Part shown: positions 13,522 through 63,159 of the stretch, piece after piece | Layout: each line of letters starts with the position of its first letter | How positions within the stretch are numbered: the stretch's first letter is position 1 | Source: Octopus sinensis | Taxonomy: Eukaryota | NCBI RefSeq assembly: GCF_006345805.1 | Contig: NC_043021.1 | Span: 12,958,001 to 13,022,000 of the forward strand | Direction: 5' to 3' | Length of the DNA stretch: 64,000 bases | Translations under genes and position numbers: made by a program | The notes under the pieces: model-generated | Database searches by the model: none | Seen by the model: the letters and a program-made list of their open reading frames with translations, nothing else | Told to the model about the DNA's origin: nothing

Positions 13522-14160
<639 letters not shown>

Positions 14161-33587: not shown

Positions 33588-34948
33588 GTAAGCGATGTTA
33601 CAGACTTCCATATATATCTCTGCGTGAATGGAGAATCACTGGAGTGCTATGTTGGTTTTTGTATCCCATTCCATATAAAAGATCTTTACAGCATTTAGGA
33701 AGTTCTGTAAATATGACTTCACTGTCTTTTCATTTCTTGTGTCAGCAGTTTATCTAGCATGGGGTATGGGAAAGAAATCTGAGATCCCCTTTGGTCACGA
33801 TACTGACCATGGGATTGCACCTAAAAAGCTACCCTCCCAGTCACAAGTCCGGGTAAGGTTGTTTATGGAAGACCAGCAGTCACCCATGCATACCGGTCTC
33901 CCTTCTCCATGCCACCAGTGTTATCCAAGGGAAAGGCAAAGGGGCCGATACAGCTTGGCCCCTGTGACGTCACAACTCATTTCTACAGCTGAGTGAACTG
34001 GAGCAATGTGAAATAAAGTGTCTTGCTCAAGAATACAACACGCAGCCCGGCCCAGGAATCAAACTCAACCTCACGATTGTATGCTCGATGCTCTAACCAC
34101 AGAGCCATGTGCCCTCACACTGAGCCATTTAATTAATAATATTTTTTATAATCAACTACCATGCATTGACTAAGTAAGTTTCATATTAAGGCTGTGCCGT
34201 ACGCATGGGATTTGAACCCACATCTTATGTATTAGCAACAAGTGTGCTACCATTTACATTAACGTACTCCTATGTTGCAAATACTTAGAGGTGTGGGTTT
34301 GAGTCCCATGCATATGATAAACCCTACTTTTTTCCATTGAGAGTTTATAAGCCCCAATATTAGACTATTTAACTTAGTCAATACTTGGTGACCGCTTATT
34401 AGAATATTATTTACAAATTGTGAAATTCAGCACTGGTTACCAAATACTCGCAGAAAACTAATTTGTTTTGAAGAGAGAAATGTAACTGATAATAAAGTGC
34501 CCTCAAACAGCTGTCATCCTCTGTATGTAGATGTGTATATATATATATATATCCATGTGCTCATGCATCATCAGCATCTGCTTTCCATGCTGGCATGGGT
34601 TGGACTTTGGTGTTTGTAAATGTTTTAGCTGGAAGATCAAAACTAATTTTCTAAATCCTTCTTTATAGATCAAAACTAATTTTATAGATCCTTCTTTCAA
34701 AGTTCCTACTATTGATTACATTAACTTCAGTGCTCAACTGGTCCTTAATTTTAGCAACCCCAGTGTACTTAATTTATTGACCCCCAAAGATGAAAGGCAA
34801 TGTCAGCTATGGAATTTGAACATAAACCTGGAGAAAATGCCACTAAGCATTTTATCGTATGTGCCAGGTTGTTTCCTTTGTAATACTATACGCATAGCAA
34901 AACATTATAATTCGGTTTAAAATCAATTTTATTTTTGTATGTTTTCAG

Positions 34949-56347: not shown

Positions 56348-56393
56348 CTGTGTTTGTCACTGTTGCCGCACTGGAAGCGGAAACAGGCATCAT
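56348..56393 (-). CDS. INO80E: INO80E exon 1 (MMPVSASSAATVTNT)
   Basis: ATG ATG...ACA G|GTATAT gives the phase 1 that exon 2 needs, and it lies in a CpG-containing promoter-like region. The total CDS is 789 nt (262 aa plus stop). Confidence 0.72.
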
Positions 56394-56564
56394 TATTGGT
56401 TGAAAAGTGAACTTTTTAACAATCTAAATGTGATAACAGAAAAATCAACCAAAAATGCAAACAGAGCGGTTGCGAACTACGTCACGGCAACATTACAGTT
56501 AACTTCCGTTTCCGACAGTAGGCACCGCTGAAACTAATTTGATTAAAACGTCATCAGTTTGTGT
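56394..56564. promoter_or_regulatory. Compact bidirectional promoter between INO80E and RPL6
   Basis: Only ~170 bp separate the INO80E ATG from the RPL6 TCT-like start. The stretch contains ETS-like ACTTCCG and two CRE half-sites (ACGTCA). Confidence 0.65.
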
Positions 56565-56590
56565 CTTTCTTTTTAGCCACTACCTGGAAT
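56565..56590 (+). other. RPL6: Putative non-coding first exon of RPL6 with a 5'TOP/TCT motif
   Basis: gt-CTTTCTTTTTAGCCACTACCTGGAAT|GTAAGT: a C followed by a pyrimidine run and a strong donor, as is typical of ribosomal-protein genes. Confidence 0.65.
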
Positions 56591-57189
56591 GTAAGTAAAA
56601 TGGTTGTTATATATGTCTCCTTATAAATCCACTTTAATCGTGGCTTTTAGCCTTAAATTTATTTTCATCATCAAGAGAAAAGTAACATGAAAGATGTTTA
56701 TTTCCGTTTCTATGCTTTATTATTTAGATTACTCATGCAAAATTGATATTATTACATGTTTTTCTCCTCTAACTCAAATTTTCATAAATGGCGATAGATT
56801 CATTTGTTAGAAGCACATGAGTTTTTTTTTTTTTCAAGAATCGTGTCTACATTCATTTACTATTTAGTAACTTTGTTCTTTGGAACATAACACTTTCCAC
56901 ATAATTCCCATGTAATGAACCTATTTCCACATGGGTTACATTCACGTGTATGTGTGTCTGTCCTCGTTAAATATATTTTCTCCCTTCTCCTTTCCCGTCG
57001 TGTCATTTTTCACCGTTCAGAGCTTGATGCCTCTCATACATATTGTTAAAATGCGGACAGAAACATTTTGTAAGTTTATAATTTTCCAATGGAGGGAGAG
57101 AGCTATTCATTTTATTATTGTAATATCGACAAACTGAAACTGGCCTCGAGCAATATAAGCTATATTAACCAACCGAATGTGGACATAGG

Positions 57190-57208
57190 TATATATACAT
57201 ACATATAT

Positions 57209-57240
<32 letters not shown>

Positions 57241-57342
57241 CATACATACATATATATTTATATACATATATATATTTATATACATATATATACATACATA
57301 TATATATTTATATACATATATATATTTATATACATATATATA

Positions 57343-57374
<32 letters not shown>

Positions 57375-57375
57375 G
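57190..57375. repeat. TA-rich microsatellite
   Basis: Direct reading of the sequence. Confidence 0.97.
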
Positions 57376-58222
57376 GACTATAATCCAAATTGTGTTCTCA
57401 TCTGCATATTCCAGCTATTATACATGTGTAGAACCATATACTTACACAGATATACTCCGCTCGTGTTGCCTCTAATTATTTTTAGGGGTTAATGTTAAGC
57501 TTTTTAGGCCCTAAGGTACGAATATCGTATACATTCATCACTGTCTCCTGTTAGGGCTCCTTAAAGACTGAGTGGAATTCGAACCAACGCGAGGAGCCTC
57601 AGGTGCTCGACATCGTCTTCAAAATTTAAAGACGAGTAAGGCAATGAATAATACAAATGTGTGGTCTATAAAAATAAACAAGATTAGTTGGTCATGGTTG
57701 GAGCGTCGCTCATTTACGATTTTCAGTTCGTCCAGTTTTTAATAATTTGAACGTATACTATTTATGTGTTCAGAAATATTGCTTTTTGTTTTTAACCACG
57801 GGCATTTTCTATGTAATAGCTGTTTAACACATGGTCAACCATCAATAAGCTGACCCATGACCAAAAAAATAAAGCATCCAGACGCGATCACTCCCGGTTT
57901 TTTTTTCCTTGAAGCAGTGTCTTTATATATTTATATATATCTAATGTTTTCAAGAGAATACGGTGATATTTCAAGGACATTGGCTACTATTTCTCGCCGA
58001 TAAGGTGAGTACGTTGAGGCCTCTCGTTGGTTTGTTGTAGTAATTTCAAAACGAAGCCATGGTAAAGTATTAACTCATCGTGTGGTTAAGAACTTCATAA
58101 TCGCATGGTTTCGGGATCAGTCGCTTAAACGCATCATTGTGTTTACATTTTGTGCTTCTCCCAAAACCGATAAGCTACAAACAGTGCCGTTGTGGTCAAC
58201 AAGTTTGCTTGGGGGCCTTGAA

Positions 58223-59189
58223 ATTAGCGATCCCTTACTTCAAAACACGGGTATGGGTTAATGGCAGGAAGCACATCCGCTTATAAAACAGGGTCGTTTA
58301 ATTTATTCCAGCAAGTAAAACTGAATGAACGAACATTTGTGTTGGTTTAAATTCAACGCACGTGTGACTAGTGTGTCTCCACAGGATTTCGTGAAACGAG
58401 GCAAAACAGTTTACTATGCATTAATGTGGATTCCTTGTTTTAGTTCATGGAATCCTGTCTTAGGATGGTGGCGATTTGTAGTTCAAATCTAACTAGAAGA
58501 CATGGCTCTTTTCTATGACTTTTTACCAATGTTTGAGATTGTTATTAAATAATGAGCAAGATGTGAACGCTGTAATATGCAGATGTGGCATTTTGTTCAA
58601 GTGTCGTCTTCTATATCCCTGGTTTGACCAAAGCTTTGAATGGATTTGGTAGGCGGAAATCGAAAGAAGCCCATCGTGTATGTATTACTATCAAGTGTCA
58701 CCATCATTCATGCAGTCTTCCATGAAAACCTGGAAGAAATGTTCTCTTGCTCAAAGACAGGTGAGGTTTGGTGACATGAAGGGCATCTGCCTGTAGAAAA
58801 TTTACCATGACATGTAAGAATGGGAAGTGGTTGTTAAAACAAGGACGACAATTGTAGTTTATGTACTGAAGATTATCTTTGTGGATAGAAGCAGTTGTAT
58901 TCTGTTGAAAGCTCTATTCTGTGGGCCTTGGTTCAGGTACCTGATCTGGTTAACCATTAACAAGGAATCCACATTAATGCATAGTAAACTGTTTTGCCTC
59001 GTTTTACGAAATCCTGTGGAGACACACTAGTCACACGTGCGTTGAATTTAAACCAACACAAATGTTCGTTCATTCAGTTTTACTTGCTGGAATAAATCAA
59101 ACGAATATGTCATCGAGACCCTGTTTTATAAGCGGATGTGCTTCCTGCCATTAACCCATACCCGTGTTTTGAAGTAAGGGATCGCTAAT
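58223..59189. repeat. Long near-perfect inverted repeat (arms 58223-58439 and 58959-59189)
   Basis: The arms are reverse complements (attagcgatcccttacttcaaaacacggg... and ...cccgtgttttgaagtaagggatcgctaat), with one short insertion in the right arm and a ~520-bp spacer. Confidence 0.92.
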
Positions 59190-59396
59190 AATATACTTTC
59201 TTTCTTACAATTATAATTGTCCTGAAAACAATACAAAAAAATCTTTGTGAAGATAGCTTTCATTATTAAAGTGGTGTTTGGAACATAGATTAAGTTTCAC
59301 GGGTTTTAATTTCGATGACTTGAAAACAGAAACTTTGTACCATAATACCAAGGGCAGTTTCAGGAGGGTTGCTATGAAAAGGGTTAACAACACTAG

Positions 59397-59485
59397 GTGT
59401 GTGGCTATGATGGAAATGTCATGATCTGTCAATCCACTGATTTTATCAAGTTTGATGAGAATTTATTTTGACGCTGAGCACACAC
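59397..59485 (+). ncRNA. Box C/D snoRNA copy 1 (guide for the 18S site equivalent to human Um1288; SNORD110-like function)
   Basis: C box ATGATG(G) at 59407, guide GATCTGTCAATCCA then D' CTGA at 59437, C' TGATGA at 59453, D CTGA at 59474, terminal stem GTGTGTG/GCACACAC. Confidence 0.85.
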
Positions 59486-60497
59486 ATTAATATTTTAGTA
59501 AACTTGGCAATTTTTCTGCCCTTTACGAGTTTTTAACACTTTAGTATTTAGATTACGCTGTCAAATGTAATGCTTATTTCTTGACGTTGTTTCAAATTAA
59601 TCAAGGTTTATATCATAGCTTTGAGATTTTGATGATGTGGTTGTATGTATTTATGTTTTTAGAATTACATTGTAGGGTACCTAACGCAGAAAGACACTAT
59701 GAGACACATTCACTCAGTCATATACAAAATGTGACGTCGTTGTGGTATAAAATGTCCTGTTGATAATAGAAAGATTGCAGTGTGGAAGATGTTTGTAAGC
59801 CATTGCAGAACACACAAAAACTTAGTTTCACTTCAACATTTAAACTTCATTTGTGACAAAATATTTTTCGGCGCTTTGAAACCATGACCTGTTCACTGAC
59901 AAAACTTCATGCTGCATCTGAGAGAGTTAGTTCATGATATATGTGTAAATGTGCATGCATGCATATACACAAATGTATGTAAGTATATAGACGTGTATGT
60001 AAATGTATGCGTTCAAGTTGTATGTATAACTGTTATTCCGTCGATGGTTGTGTGTATATATACACACACACACATTTGTTCTGAGCACATGGTCTCAGAT
60101 CAAGTCACTTGCTGTGCAAGTACATCGTTGTAAATAAAAAAATTATCTCTATGAAATATATTGTTTTAATCGAAATGAAAATAAAATTTCGTATTGACAT
60201 TGACCAGCCCTTGCATGCATACAGTGTGTTTAACGTGCATAACACAGAAAGACACACACACACCGTAAGACATATACACGCTCATACACATACCTTCACC
60301 GACAGAAAATGTGACAGTCTCATCGTTAGAATTAAAAGTTAAAGTATAAATGTGAAACATAAGATCAAGTCTTTTTTTTTTTGTCTTTTTCAAAGAATAC
60401 TTGGTTTATATTTGTCTTAGACTGTGTGATTTGAAAGGGAATTGGTTGCTGTTTGTGATGGTCAAGCATCTACATAGGTGCTCTCTGGTTGGGACTG

Positions 60498-60582
60498 GTG
60501 TGTAGCCATGATGTACTCGAAATCTGTCAATCCACTGAATAAATCAGTTTGACGATAAACCATTTTGACTCTGAGCACACAC
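60498..60582 (+). ncRNA. Box C/D snoRNA copy 2
   Basis: C box ATGATG(T) at 60508, 13-nt guide AATCTGTCAATCC then D' CTGA at 60535, C' TGACGA at 60550, D CTGA at 60571, terminal stem GTGTGT/GCACAC. Confidence 0.87.
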
Positions 60583-61258
60583 TTTTGGAAAAGGACTATG
60601 ACCTGTCTGTTGCCTGGGCTTGGGAATTTGATGTGTGAACGTACTTTCTAAAAATTTTGTGGGGTGCAAAATCAATTTTCACATTCTTGTGTTTAGAAAA
60701 CAGCATAAAAATCTCAAAGCTACGAGATAATGCTAAAAGGTTGGCTGAAAGCAATGGATAAATAAGCATTACATTTGACAATAATCTGAATGCTAAGGAA
60801 TTAGACATCAAAATCTGTCTTTTGGCACTGTGAGAATAATTTTAGATTATAATTTATATTCAGTTAGAATGATGGATTAGATTCAGAGTAAAGTATTAGG
60901 TTTGTCTTCCTACATTGTTTCACATTCCTTATTCGAAAATGACAAAACAAATTCAAATGGATATATGTACGATAATGTAATTATTTTGTCCAATTTCAAT
61001 TTACTGCTCTGAAACAGTGTATTGGTTCTAGTGACTATTTCTTTTGCATCATTGTTGTTTAATATGCACCTTTCATGCAGACATGGGTTGGATGGTTTGA
61101 CTGGAGACTCGACAGGGTTTTTTTACAGCTGGATGCCCTTCCTAACACCAACCATTCTGTAGAGTGGTGTGATGCAAGTTAATCAGAAAAAAACTGCCAA
61201 GCCTGGTTTCTATGATTTCATTTGTGTTCCTTTATTCTTGGTGGTGGCCACATAATTG

Positions 61259-61346
61259 GTGTGTAACCATGATGCACTGTCAAGATCTGTCAATCCACTG
61301 ATTAAATCAACTTGATTGATAAACCCATATGACACTGAGTTCACAC
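61259..61346 (+). ncRNA. Box C/D snoRNA copy 3
   Basis: C box ATGATG(C) at 61269, guide GATCTGTCAATCCA then D' CTGA at 61298, C'-like TGATTGA, D CTGA at 61335, terminal stem GTGTGTAAC/GTTCACAC. Confidence 0.85.
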
Positions 61347-61855
61347 TATTTTTGGCCTTGAAAACCTGGTTCTGATTTAGCTGGGTTCTCTGTTTGGTCT
61401 AGGTCCATATGACCCTTGAGGGTCCACATAAGATTTTGTTGTTAAAGTTTATGTTTGGTTTATATTTCTACAATACACAAAATATTTAATGCAAAAATAT
61501 AATTGTTTTTAGGTAGCGAATGGTTGTGAGAGTTCTAGCCCTTGAGTAAAATAAAAAATTAATGGGATCCATAGATGAAAAAAGAATGAAGAACAACTTG
61601 TTTAGAATACGGAGCAATATCCATAACCTTAGCAGGGGCTTTGGTGCGACTGATAATCTGCTTACACATGCATGTCAACATCTGCAGGAAAGACAGAGAG
61701 AAGATTGTTAGTGCAGGGTGGAGGGACTGAAGGTGGTGAGGTGGGGGCAGCTTGTGGTATTGTAGTAGGGATAGAAAAATATGAGGAGACTGCATGTCTG
61801 TGAGGCAGAGGCTGGAACTTTTGTTGTGAGATATTTCCGTTGTTACTACCATTAA

Positions 61856-62066
61856 CCCTTTAGTGTTCAGAATACTCTGTTAAATATAATACTTTTTCAC
61901 TCAAATTGTTTTGAATTAATCCTGCATTATCTTATATCTTTGAGGTTTCAATGATGTGATTGTTTATTTTTAGAATGGCATTGTAGGGTAGGTGTGAAAA
62001 GCTAGATATCGCCTGTTTGAATATAAAACATGTAGAATATATTTGGCCGGTTTAAATACTAAAGGG
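61856..62066. mobile_element. TTAA-flanked piggyBac-like MITE (family E; further copies at 62385-62597, 62602-62770, 63664-63870, 52545-52772, 46880-47140, 37140-37340 and 18420-18690)
   Basis: TTAA|CCCTTTAG...CTAAAGGG|TTAA. CCC/GGG termini with a TTAA duplication are the piggyBac signature. Confidence 0.82.
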
Positions 62067-62889
62067 TTAAACCCAATTCATGCTCACTGCTATTGGGGTG
62101 AAGATGGCTATCTGCAAGTGTGAGTCAGAGTGGCTTTCCACCAAATCTCCCTTGCCATTCACTGGCACAATACCTCTTCCGTTTTCTCTGCTGGGACCAG
62201 GGGGTGGTCTGAATCAAGAGAGCATAAGAATTTTGTAGTTCACTACACATACAATAACCTACTTCATTGTTGACTGATTCACTGAACTAGTCTATAATAA
62301 GGATATGTAAATATTCACTCCTCCAGAAACTGTTTATTTTAGCCCTTCAGCATTTAATCCAACCCAAATATTCTTCCTGTTTAACCCTTTAGCATTCAGA
62401 TTATTCTGTCAAATATGATATTTATTCATCCATATTGTTTTAAGCTAATCATGCTTAATCATTTTGTAGCTTTAAGATTTCGATGATGTTATCACCTGTT
62501 TTTTAGATTGACATTTTAGGTTGGTGTGAGATACCAAATCTGGGCAGTTTTAAGAGAAAACAGGTAGATTATTTGGGCCGGTTTAAACACTAAAGGGTTA
62601 ATGTTCAAACCAACCGGATCCAACCTCTCACACCTACCATACAATTTTCATTCTAAAATATACAAACACACCTTTGAAATCTGAAAGCTACAAAATGTGT
62701 GATTAATTCAAAATTTTATGAATAAATAAGCAATATATTTGACAAAAAAATCAGAATGCTAAAGGGTTAAGAATGGTGATCGGTAGAACAACAGGGAATG
62801 TAATGACTTGTTTTGCAGTATTCGTTGATGTTCTGGTGTTAGAAACTGTTATTACGATGCTTTTCATATTCTCCAACAGTTCATTCATT

Positions 62890-63159
62890 ATGGAAGGAAC
62901 AGAGAAAAAGAAGCCTGAGACTAAAGCAGCAGTAGCAAAGAAGGCATCAACCAAGCGCCGGCCTCGTAATCCAGTCATATCTTCAAGTGGTTTGAGGAGG
63001 TTTTCTCGATCTCGGGTGTACAAGAGGAGGAGGATCTTCATCAAGAAGGAACAACCTAAGACAAAAGCAGCTAAGAAGGTCAAACCTGCAAAGTATGTCG
63101 TGAAGCCTATTGGTGGTGAGAAAAATGGTGAAACGAGGAAAGTCCGTGTTAAGCGATTG
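62890..63159 (+). CDS. RPL6: 60S ribosomal protein L6 (eL6), first coding exon; the gene continues beyond the window
   Basis: RNPVISSGLRRFSRSRVYKR...VVKPIGGEKNGETRKVRVKRL, versus human RNPVLVRGIGRYSRSAMY...[21 protein letters not shown]. Acceptor at 62879/62880, donor TTG|GTGAGT. Confidence 0.95.

What the first reader, a model, noticed from the sequence alone, without database searches (positions are those of the whole stretch)
59397..61346. Three paralogous box C/D snoRNAs with one conserved 18S guide inside a single putative RPL6 intron
Seen in sequence: three ~88-nt units about 1.1 kb and 0.76 kb apart. Each has C, D', C'-like and D boxes and a terminal stem, and each keeps ATCTGTCAATCCA-CTGA while the flanks and the D-side sequence have diverged. 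Established knowledge: the guide is complementary to the conserved 18S segment GGAUUGACAGAUU. The D+5 rule points to the first U, which is human Um1288, guided in human by SNORD110/HBII-55 from NOP56. Inference: this guide is hosted by RPL6 here and has been triplicated. Metazoan hosts usually carry one snoRNA per intron, so three in one intron would need either unannotated non-coding exons between them or an unusual polycistronic processing route.
Basis: partly seen in the sequence, partly recalled or inferred. Interest (0 to 1): 0.78.

Follow-up and report, generated by a model that had tools for sequence, protein, structure and literature searches.

The report
Three snoRNA copies in octopus RPL6 intron
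Three sister copies of a known small nucleolar RNA, the guide for one conserved 2'-O-methylation in 18S rRNA, sit between the first two exons of the octopus RPL6 gene and are kept in three octopod species; it is a tidy example of a known kind with a somewhat unusual layout.

Summary
Three 86-90 nt box C/D units lie at 59397-59486, 60498-60583 and 61259-61346 on the + strand. Each has C, D', C'-like and D boxes and an 8-10 bp terminal stem. All share an invariant 17-mer, ATCTGTCAATCCA-CTGA. Copy 1 passes Rfam's threshold for snoR14, the plant counterpart of human HBII-55/SNORD110; copies 2 and 3 score below threshold but match the same family best.

The window is Octopus sinensis chromosome CM016883.1. 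I located RPL6 exon 1, a 26-nt TOP leader, at 56565-56590. The ATG exon is 62880-63159. All three copies therefore lie between RPL6 exons 1 and 2, a 6,289-nt interval.

The same three copies sit at the same place in O. bimaculoides and Argonauta hians. Between Octopus and Argonauta, only a block of about 400 nt just after exon 1 and the three snoRNAs are still alignable in that interval.

The claim that all three share one intron is likely but unproven. I found no conserved internal exon and no excess of 3' splice sites after the copies. Squid-like RPL6 cDNAs have short leaders, and several copies have extended outer stems. No octopus transcript data were available.

This is a new member of a known family in a new host, with a clustered layout that has precedents in Drosophila and rice. 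Interest is moderate.

The parts
59397..59486 (+). snoRNA copy 1 (box C/D, SNORD110/snoR14 family). C box 59407-59413, 18S guide 59424-59436, D' 59437-59440, C' 59453-59459, D 59474-59477.
   Evidence: Rfam snoR14 41.4 bits against a gathering score of 40. R1 model 107 bits. Orthologues at L003 7499-7592 and L004 8364-8451.
60498..60583 (+). snoRNA copy 2. C box 60508-60514, guide 60522-60534, D' 60535-60538, C' (TGACGA) 60550-60555, D 60571-60574.
   Evidence: Rfam snoR14 24.7 bits, below threshold but the best-scoring family. R1 model 106 bits. Orthologues at L003 8158-8245 and L004 8967-9050.
61259..61346 (+). snoRNA copy 3. C box 61269-61275, guide 61285-61297, D' 61298-61301, C'-like TGATTGA 61313-61319, D 61335-61338.
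   Evidence: Rfam snoR14 19.5 bits. R1 model 112 bits. Orthologues at L003 8746-8838 and L004 9461-9553. Carries the compensatory A-U pair in the terminal stem.
56565..56590 (+). RPL6 exon 1, a non-coding 5'-terminal oligopyrimidine (TOP) leader: CTTTCTTTTTAGCCACTACCTGGAAT, followed by the donor GTAAGT at 56591.
   Evidence: Leader and donor are conserved in O. bimaculoides and Argonauta hians. The leader is homologous to cap-adjacent 5' ends of squid-like RPL6 cDNAs, which read CTTTTCAACAGCCACGAAT| and CCTTTTCTATAGCCACGGAAT| directly after the cDNA adaptor.
56394..56564 (.). Compact promoter shared by divergent genes: INO80E on the - strand (its coding start is at 56393) and RPL6 on the + strand. 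It contains a tandem CTTCCG pair and two ACGTCA motifs.
   Evidence: Gene calls in L002, L003 and L004 show INO80E (-) next to RPL6 (+) in all three species. The motifs are invariant across the three species. This is the only stretch of undepleted CpG upstream of the ATG exon (o/e 0.85-1.13 at 55-58 kb).
56591..62879 (+). The interval between RPL6 exon 1 and the ATG exon: 6,289 nt, intron 1 if it is spliced as one piece. It holds the three snoRNAs and many transposon fragments.
   Evidence: Donor at 56591 and acceptor ...TCTCCAACAG| at 62879. The same interval is 4,315 nt in O. bimaculoides and about 3,820 nt in Argonauta.
62880..63159 (+). RPL6 exon 2: 10 nt of leader, the ATG at 62890, and 90 codons.
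   Evidence: Pfam Ribosomal_L6e_N, E = 3.8e-7. Identical to residues 40-129 of the O. sinensis RPL6 protein P0048, and it aligns with the N-termini of the O. bimaculoides, Callistoctopus and Argonauta proteins.

Best explanation
Three paralogous box C/D snoRNA genes of the HBII-55/SNORD110 = snoR14 family lie in the 5'-UTR intron region of the Octopus sinensis RPL6 gene, between the 26-nt TOP exon 1 and the ATG exon.

Inferred mechanism:
1. They are transcribed as part of the RPL6 pre-mRNA from the TOP promoter that RPL6 shares with divergent INO80E.
2. Core box C/D proteins bind the C/D kink-turn motif, helped by the long terminal stem.
3. The flanking intron RNA is removed, leaving RNAs of about 85 nt.
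4. Each RNA pairs its D' guide (AUCUGUCAAUCC) with 18S GGAUUGACAGAU. Fibrillarin then 2'-O-methylates the first U of that motif, the equivalent of human Um1288.

The triplication predates the split of Octopus and Argonauta, and all three copies are under purifying selection. Most likely (about 0.6) they share one long intron. If so, the copies must be separated by cleavage between them or by assembly that does not depend on splicing, rather than by the usual one-per-intron, splice-site-coupled route.

Shown here: the sequences, the family match, the host exons, synteny and conservation. Inferred: expression, methylation and the processing route.
For: Family: Rfam snoR14 for copy 1 above threshold, and the same family scores best for copies 2 and 3. 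snoR14 is tabulated as the homologue of human HBII-55 and Neurospora CD44, also acting through a D' guide (PMC2780460). SNORD110 guides 18S Um1288.

Target: the motif lies in eukaryotic SSU rRNA. One was confirmed as RF01960 at 1445 bits, with the motif at about position 1234 of 1813. The D' guide pairs with that motif in essentially every one of those contigs.

Selection: the 17-mer guide plus D' box is invariant in 9 of 9 copies from three species. The terminal stem is 87.7% paired, with one pair switching G-C (6 copies) to A-U (3 copies) and never broken. Octopus and Argonauta introns are otherwise unalignable, except for the promoter-proximal block.

Host: exon 1 and its donor are conserved and match the cap-adjacent leaders of related cDNAs. 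Exon 2 is RPL6. All copies are on the RPL6 strand.

Single intron:
- The one internal exon candidate examined across species (57918-58004, upstream of the copies) loses its acceptor in O. bimaculoides.
- A candidate donor at 61736/61741 lies in a stretch that does not align even with O. bimaculoides.
- Acceptor-like sites 30-130 nt downstream of the copies are no commoner than at random intron positions: 9-48% of random positions score as well.
- Squid-like cDNA leaders are only about 43-45 nt.
- Several copies have extended outer stems, duplex energies of -11.6 to -15.7 kcal/mol.
Against: - No RNA data for any octopus could be reached, so expression, the RNA ends, methylation and the splice junction between exon 1 and exon 2 are all inferred.
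- Copies 2 and 3 fall below Rfam's gathering score.
- The octopus's own 18S sequence was not examined.
- Non-coding exons of snoRNA host genes are often unconserved, so their absence from alignments is weak evidence.
- The RefSeq model of O. sinensis RPL6 starts inside the proposed intron at 62773. This could reflect a second start site or retained intron, although the extension is not conserved.
- One squid-like contig (L005) carries a different leader joined at the same point. Alternative upstream exons may therefore exist in cephalopod RPL6.
- Argonauta copy 1 has a degenerate C' box and a weak inner stem, and it may be decaying.
Confidence: 0.85

Rival explanations
1. The snoRNAs and the host are the same, but each copy sits in its own intron. 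Short, poorly conserved non-coding exons lie between them. These exons would be used in some or all primary transcripts, as in GAS5/UHG-type host genes, and the usual one-per-intron, splicing-coupled route would apply.
For: One snoRNA per intron is the prevalent rule in vertebrates and silkworm (PMC3089462). Acceptor-like sites exist 40-113 nt after every copy in all three species, and strong donor-like sites follow some of them, for example 61736/61741 and L003 7775. One squid-like contig has an alternative leader joined at the same point.
Against: The acceptor-like sites are no better than at random intron positions. None of the candidate exons is alignable between Octopus and Argonauta, and one candidate donor lies in sequence not shared even with O. 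bimaculoides. TOP mRNAs have short leaders, and the related cDNAs join the exon 1 homologue to a leader of only about 25 nt before the ATG.
Confidence: 0.3
2. The cluster is an independent polycistronic or mono-cistronic snoRNA transcription unit with its own promoter(s), lying between the INO80E/RPL6 promoter and the RPL6 ATG exon. It would not be processed from RPL6 pre-mRNA.
For: A CpG-rich, TATA-like stretch with a strong donor lies at 57860-58010. The RefSeq RPL6 model starts at 62773, downstream of the cluster.
Against: No sequence upstream of any copy is shared between paralogues or conserved to Argonauta. The 57.9-kb stretch is not conserved in its splice signals in O. bimaculoides. 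The conserved TOP exon 1 with its donor lies upstream of all three copies, and its only conserved acceptor partner lies downstream of them. RPL6 transcription must therefore run through the cluster.
Confidence: 0.05
3. Only one copy is a working snoRNA gene; the other one or two are decaying pseudogenes or retroposed copies.
For: Copies 2 and 3 are below Rfam's threshold. C' boxes are imperfect in copies 2 and 3. Argonauta copy 1 scores lowest (55.6 bits).
Against: All nine copies keep the C, D' and D boxes, the stem and the guide intact, while the neighbouring intron has diverged beyond alignment. There are no poly-A tails or target-site duplications. Order, number and copy-specific signatures are shared across species: the base after ATGATG, ACTGTCAAG in copy 3, and CTGAAT in copy 2.
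Confidence: 0.08

Closest known systems
Human SNORD110 (HBII-55), Arabidopsis snoR14 (Rfam RF01280, clan CL00076) and Neurospora crassa CD44
   Same: Box C/D architecture. The same 18S target motif is read by the guide upstream of D', which places the methylation on the U equivalent to human Um1288 and Neurospora Um1227. All are encoded in introns.
   Different: The host gene differs: RPL6 here, NOP56 in human (from memory). There are three tandem paralogues instead of one. The sequence upstream of the D box is not shared with the plant family consensus, and no conserved second target was found for it.
Paralogous snoRNA triplets in vertebrate ribosomal-protein genes, such as SNORD18A-C in RPL4, SNORD36A-C in RPL7A and SNORD58A-C in RPL17 (from memory)
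   Same: Several copies with the same guide sit in one ribosomal-protein host gene driven by a TOP promoter.
   Different: In those genes each copy has its own intron between coding exons. Here all three lie between the non-coding exon 1 and the ATG exon, 1.5-3.4 kb from the next known 3' splice site.
Intronic snoRNA gene clusters of Drosophila (mostly H/ACA) and rice
   Same: More than one snoRNA, often isoforms of each other, sits within what is annotated as a single intron (PMC3089462).
   Different: The Drosophila clusters are described as H/ACA; this one is box C/D and in a mollusc. That this cluster really occupies a single intron has not been shown by transcripts.

Membership tests
Box C/D snoRNA | C box (RUGAUGA) near the 5' end and D box (CUGA) near the 3' end | tested here: met
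   RTGATG (ATGATG in eight copies, GTGATG in O. bimaculoides copy 2) and CTGA are present in all 9 copies from three species. The seventh C-box base varies (G, T or C).
Box C/D snoRNA | A terminal stem that brings the C and D boxes together | tested here: met
   87.7% of stem cells are paired across the 9 copies. One pair shows a G-C to A-U double change in 3 copies and is never broken. Sliding the 3' partners by 1-3 columns drops pairing to 16-70%.
Box C/D snoRNA | Internal D' and C' boxes | tested here: met
   D' CTGA is invariant. C' is UGAUGA in 4 of 9 copies and a one-off variant (UGACGA, UGAUUGA, UGAAUG) in the rest, as is usual for animal snoRNAs.
SNORD110 / HBII-55 / snoR14 family (Rfam clan CL00076) | Score at or above the family's curated covariance-model threshold | tested here: inconclusive
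   Copy 1 scores 41.4 bits against a threshold of 40 (met). Copies 2 and 3 score 24.7 and 19.5 bits (not met), although snoR14 is their best-scoring family.
SNORD110 / HBII-55 / snoR14 family (Rfam clan CL00076) | A guide of at least 10 nt directly upstream of D', complementary to 18S GGAUUGACAGAU, with the first U opposite the fifth guide position | tested here: met
   There are 12 Watson-Crick pairs from guide positions 2-13, read from the sequence. The motif was confirmed in eukaryotic SSU rRNA from environmental contigs. The octopus 18S itself was not available.
SNORD110 / HBII-55 / snoR14 family (Rfam clan CL00076) | A stable RNA of about 80-90 nt bound by fibrillarin, and 2'-O-methylation at the target U | not testable with these tools
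   No octopus RNA or modification data were reachable.
Intron-encoded snoRNA of a TOP (ribosomal-protein) host gene | Lies on the host strand, inside an intron of the host transcript | tested here: met
   Exon 1 (56565-56590) and exon 2 (62880-63159) bracket all three copies on the + strand. The exon 1 assignment rests on conservation and on homology to the 5' ends of related cDNAs, not on octopus transcripts.
Intronic snoRNA gene cluster (several snoRNAs in one intron) | No exon between the snoRNAs in the primary host transcript | tested here: inconclusive
   No conserved internal exon and no excess of splice acceptors after the copies. Unconserved non-coding exons cannot be excluded without cDNA.

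The most novel reading that the evidence does not exclude
Octopods have kept, probably for on the order of 100 million years (divergence time from memory), a cluster of three same-guide box C/D snoRNAs inside a single long 5'-UTR intron of RPL6, each 0.4-3.4 kb from the 3' splice site. Their release would then depend on extended outer stems and on cleavage between the copies, not on the splice-site-coupled, one-per-intron route typical of animals. That would make this a natural animal model for polycistronic intronic box C/D processing.
Probability: 0.5. Interest if true: 0.5.

Novelty: new member of a known kind. Interest (0 to 1): 0.4.

Why it matters
The literature search here found no dedicated study of cephalopod snoRNAs. 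This locus gives a well-supported, conserved example, with its target, host gene and evolutionary depth defined. It shows that the guide for the Um1288-equivalent site has moved host, from NOP56 in human to RPL6 in octopods. It also corrects the 5' end of the RPL6 gene model.

If the three copies do share one intron, the locus is a convenient test case for how animal cells separate several box C/D snoRNAs from one intron. If they do not, it points to unannotated non-coding exons in a ribosomal-protein gene. Either result is incremental rather than field-changing.

Tried and rejected
- **Protein search with the ATG exon alone.** It found nothing. A composite query was needed to reach the cephalopod RPL6 entries. 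Exact-sequence look-ups of the window's long reading frames also failed.
- **A second rRNA target for the sequence upstream of the D box.** The best candidate was a 9-bp match, including G-U pairs, to a 28S-like motif GUCAAAGUG, seen for copies 1 and 2 only. It is not kept in the other copies or species, so I rejected it as a conserved guide.
- **A weak Rfam match of copy 2 to SNORD36.** It comes only from a U-rich stretch; the SNORD36 consensus guide is different.
- **Yeast snR55 as the homologue.** My own first recollection was wrong. snR55 corresponds to human U33, and the table lists no S. cerevisiae homologue for this guide.
- **Candidate internal exon 57918-58004.** It has a strong donor at 58005, but it loses its acceptor and has a weakened donor in O. 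bimaculoides.
- **mir-297-type Rfam hits.** Those at 57.2-57.4 kb and 59.9 kb are TA/TG low-complexity sequence.
- **A simple regular-expression scan for further C/D snoRNAs.** It found none that was credible.
- **O. vulgaris short isoform look-up.** It failed because only the longest product of each gene is indexed.

Full report
**1. The observation**

The 12-mer ATCTGTCAATCC occurs exactly three times in the window, at 59424, 60522 and 61285, all on the + strand. Reading the sequence gives three units of 86-90 nt at 59397-59486, 60498-60583 and 61259-61346.

Each unit has the following parts, in order:
- a 5' stem half, GTGTGTRRCY;
- a C box, ATGATGN;
- a short variable spacer;
- the invariant guide ATCTGTCAATCCA, followed directly by a D' box, CTGA;
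- a short hairpin-forming linker;
- a C'-like box: TGATGAG, TGACGAT or TGATTGA;
- 14 nt of more variable sequence;
- a D box, CTGA;
- a 3' stem half, GCACACAC or GTTCACAC.

Pairwise BLAST shows that similarity between the units starts and stops at the stems: 71-81% identity over 93-113 nt. The flanks share nothing except unrelated transposon fragments. A covariance model built from the three units finds only these three in the whole window, at 106-112 bits, with the next hit at 17 bits.

**2. Which family**

Rfam places copy 1 in snoR14 (RF01280, clan CL00076) at 41.4 bits, above the curated threshold of 40. Copies 2 and 3 score 24.7 and 19.5 bits, below threshold, but snoR14 is still their best family.

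A published homology table lists Arabidopsis snoR14, human HBII-55 (SNORD110) and Neurospora CD44 as one family, acting through the D' guide on 18S Um1227 in Neurospora numbering (PMC2780460). SNORD110 guides human 18S Um1288. That table also corrected my own first recollection: yeast snR55 is the homologue of human U33, not of this family.

The guide forms 12 Watson-Crick pairs with GGAUUGACAGAU. The fifth guide position upstream of D' is an A, which lies opposite the first U of that motif.

I confirmed that the motif belongs to eukaryotic SSU rRNA. One of these is a full-length SSU_rRNA_eukarya match (1445 bits), with the motif at about position 1234 of 1813. The D' guide pairs with that motif in essentially every one of these contigs. 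The octopus's own 18S was not available.

**3. Organism and host gene**

A single-exon ADAT2-like gene in the window (13636-14160) is an exact match to a gene called on GCA_006345805.1, chromosome CM016883.1. The RPL6 protein at the locus is named Octopus sinensis by NCBI.

The ATG exon of RPL6 is 62880-63159, with the ATG at 62890. It matches Pfam Ribosomal_L6e_N at E = 3.8e-7, and it is identical to residues 40-129 of the O. sinensis RPL6 protein. It is preceded by the acceptor TCTCCAACAG|, only 10 nt before the ATG, so an upstream non-coding exon is expected.

I place that exon at 56565-56590: CTTTCTTTTTAGCCACTACCTGGAAT, followed by GTAAGT. Five lines of evidence support this:
- It is a classic TOP start.
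- It sits about 170 nt from the coding start of the divergently transcribed INO80E gene, at 56393. This is the only region of undepleted CpG upstream of the ATG exon.
- The leader, its donor, a tandem CTTCCG pair and two ACGTCA motifs are invariant in O. bimaculoides and Argonauta hians.
- Squid-like RPL6 cDNA contigs begin, directly after the cDNA-synthesis adaptor, with the homologous CTTTTCAACAGCCACGAAT or CCTTTTCTATAGCCACGGAAT. They then switch to unrelated leader sequence at exactly the point where the octopus donor lies. I infer that these contigs come from decapodiform cephalopods, from about 68% protein identity and shared motifs; the sample species were not checked.
- The RefSeq protein's extra 39 N-terminal residues start at an in-frame ATG inside the intron, at 62773. 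They are absent from the other three octopod proteins, and the reading frame is interrupted by a stop in O. bimaculoides DNA. This looks like a modelling artefact.

All three snoRNAs therefore lie between RPL6 exon 1 and exon 2, on the RPL6 strand. The interval is 6,289 nt.

**4. Conservation**

The orthologous loci of O. bimaculoides (L003) and Argonauta hians (L004) show the same gene order: INO80E on the - strand next to RPL6 on the + strand. Each has exactly three matches to the model between exon 1 and the ATG exon:
- L003: 7499-7592, 8158-8245 and 8746-8838;
- L004: 8364-8451, 8967-9050 and 9461-9553.

These score 56-110 bits.

Between O. sinensis and Argonauta, the only alignable parts of the interval are about 400 nt after exon 1, which carries a conserved CACGTG E-box, and the three snoRNAs.

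In the nine-sequence alignment, the 17 nt of guide plus D' are invariant. RTGATG of the C box and CTGA of the D box are kept in every copy, ATGATG in eight of them and GTGATG in O. bimaculoides copy 2. Copy-specific signatures are shared across species and support one ancient triplication rather than repeated duplication:
- the base after ATGATG is G in all three copy 1 sequences and T in all three copy 2 sequences;
- ACTGTCAAG occurs in copy 3;
- CTGAAT occurs in copy 2.

That said, Argonauta copy 3 is the closest relative of all the Octopus copies by overall identity, so some gene conversion cannot be excluded.

The terminal stem is 87.7% paired. One pair is G-C in six copies and A-U in three, and it is never broken. 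Shifting the 3' partners by 1-3 columns drops pairing to 16-70%.

This pattern is what purifying selection on three functional RNA genes would produce. It argues against pseudogenes and against a dispersed repeat.

**5. One intron or several?**

This is the only part of the finding that stays open.

Evidence for a single intron:
- No block between the copies is conserved to Argonauta.
- The one internal exon candidate I compared across species (57918-58004, donor AAG|GTGAGT, upstream of the copies) loses its acceptor through a 13-nt deletion in O. bimaculoides, and its donor is weakened there.
- The strong donor-like sites at 61736/61741 lie in sequence that does not align even with O. bimaculoides.
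- Acceptor-like sites 30-130 nt after the nine copies score no better than at random positions of the same introns; 9-48% of random positions do as well.
- The squid-like cDNAs have total leaders of only about 43-45 nt.
- Several copies have outer complementary flanks beyond the core stem. The clearest case is copy 3, GCCA...TGGC, with a duplex energy of -15.7 kcal/mol that none of 300 shuffles reached. Argonauta copy 1 has TGTTGG/CCAACA. From memory of work on mammalian snoRNAs, extended outer stems go with assembly that does not depend on a nearby 3' splice site. The copies here are 0.4-3.4 kb from the exon 2 acceptor.

Evidence against a single intron:
- Non-coding host exons are often unconserved.
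- One contig (L005) has a different leader joined at the same junction.
- The RefSeq model begins inside the interval.
- No octopus cDNA could be examined.

I put the single-intron reading at about 0.6.

**6. Mechanism**

The three RNAs are most likely co-transcribed with RPL6 from its TOP promoter. They would be packaged on the C/D kink-turn motif and trimmed to the stems, and they would direct fibrillarin to the Um1288-equivalent U of 18S rRNA. Three copies would simply raise the dose of the guide.

If they share one intron, exonucleases entering from the two ends of the debranched intron can free only the outer ends. Cleavage in the spacers, or release before splicing, would also be needed, as in the polycistronic clusters of plants and yeast. 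This step is inferred and not shown.

**7. Other features**

The 14 nt upstream of the D box are T-rich and end in TTGAC in most copies. I found no rRNA complement that is kept across copies or species.

TTGAC is complementary to GUCAA in the 18S guide itself, and RNAalifold predicts that helix. Both sides are invariant, so there is no covariation to test it.

**8. Comparison and verdict**

This is a new, well-supported member of a known snoRNA family in a taxon for which my search found no dedicated snoRNA study, and it sits in a different host gene from the human one. Same-guide triplets in ribosomal-protein genes are familiar. Several snoRNAs in one intron are already described for Drosophila (H/ACA) and rice.

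Its target and host assignments are supported and extended. Its single-intron inference is plausible but unproven. Interest is moderate, at 0.4.

Noticed in passing
window 58223-58439 and 58959-59189: Two arms of about 220 nt are 99-100% complementary to each other and lie inside RPL6 intron 1. O. bimaculoides lacks 58068-58747 and 58959-59189, so these look like two very young inverted copies of one element inserted in O. sinensis.
   Followed up: partly
window 62773-62889: The RefSeq O. sinensis RPL6 protein (XP_029651065.2, 307 aa) starts at an in-frame ATG inside intron 1. The 39-residue extension is absent from the O. bimaculoides, Callistoctopus and Argonauta proteins, and a stop interrupts it in O. 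bimaculoides DNA. It is probably a gene-model artefact.
   Followed up: yes
window 56393-56990: INO80E is transcribed divergently from RPL6; its coding start is about 170 nt from the RPL6 TOP start. The first ~400 nt of RPL6 intron 1 are conserved to Argonauta, including a CACGTG E-box and TAAATGGCGA, which suggests promoter-proximal regulatory elements.
   Followed up: partly
window 59533-59680, 60700-60805 (-), 61852-62070, 62381-62600, 62694-62770 (-), and further copies after 63300: Many copies of a MITE-like repeat beginning TTAACCCTTTAGCATTCAGATT fill the spacers between the snoRNAs. They account for much of the size difference between the O. sinensis and O. bimaculoides introns.
   Followed up: partly
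window 59463-59472, 60561-60569 and 61326-61333 (and the same place in all nine copies): The segment just upstream of the D box ends in T-rich sequence plus TGAC. It is complementary to GUCAA within the 18S guide of the same RNA, and RNAalifold predicts this internal helix. There is no covariation, because both sides are invariant.
   Followed up: partly
L005 1-60 (Logan ERR4009593): One squid-like RPL6 cDNA contig has a different 5' leader (…GTGGAGCAAAT) joined to the downstream leader exactly where sister contigs carry the exon 1 homologue. It is either an alternative first exon or an assembly chimera.
   Followed up: no
window 34197-34268 (-): An Rfam tRNA match just above threshold (29.8 bits against 29) is not called by ARAGORN. 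It is probably a tRNA-derived repeat rather than a tRNA gene.
   Followed up: partly
window 13636-14160 (+): An intronless gene for a 174-residue cytidine/adenosine-deaminase-fold protein (ADAT2-like), matched exactly to a called gene in the O. sinensis assembly. It served to identify the organism.
   Followed up: partly
whole window, 1-kb bins: CpG observed/expected is 0.1-0.5 over most of the window. It rises to about 0.8-1.3 in bins within 7-10, 12-14, 19-22, 35-36 and 55-58 kb. The 12-14 and 55-58 kb regions coincide with gene 5' ends (ADAT2-like and INO80E/RPL6), so these may mark unmethylated promoters in a mosaically methylated genome.
   Followed up: no
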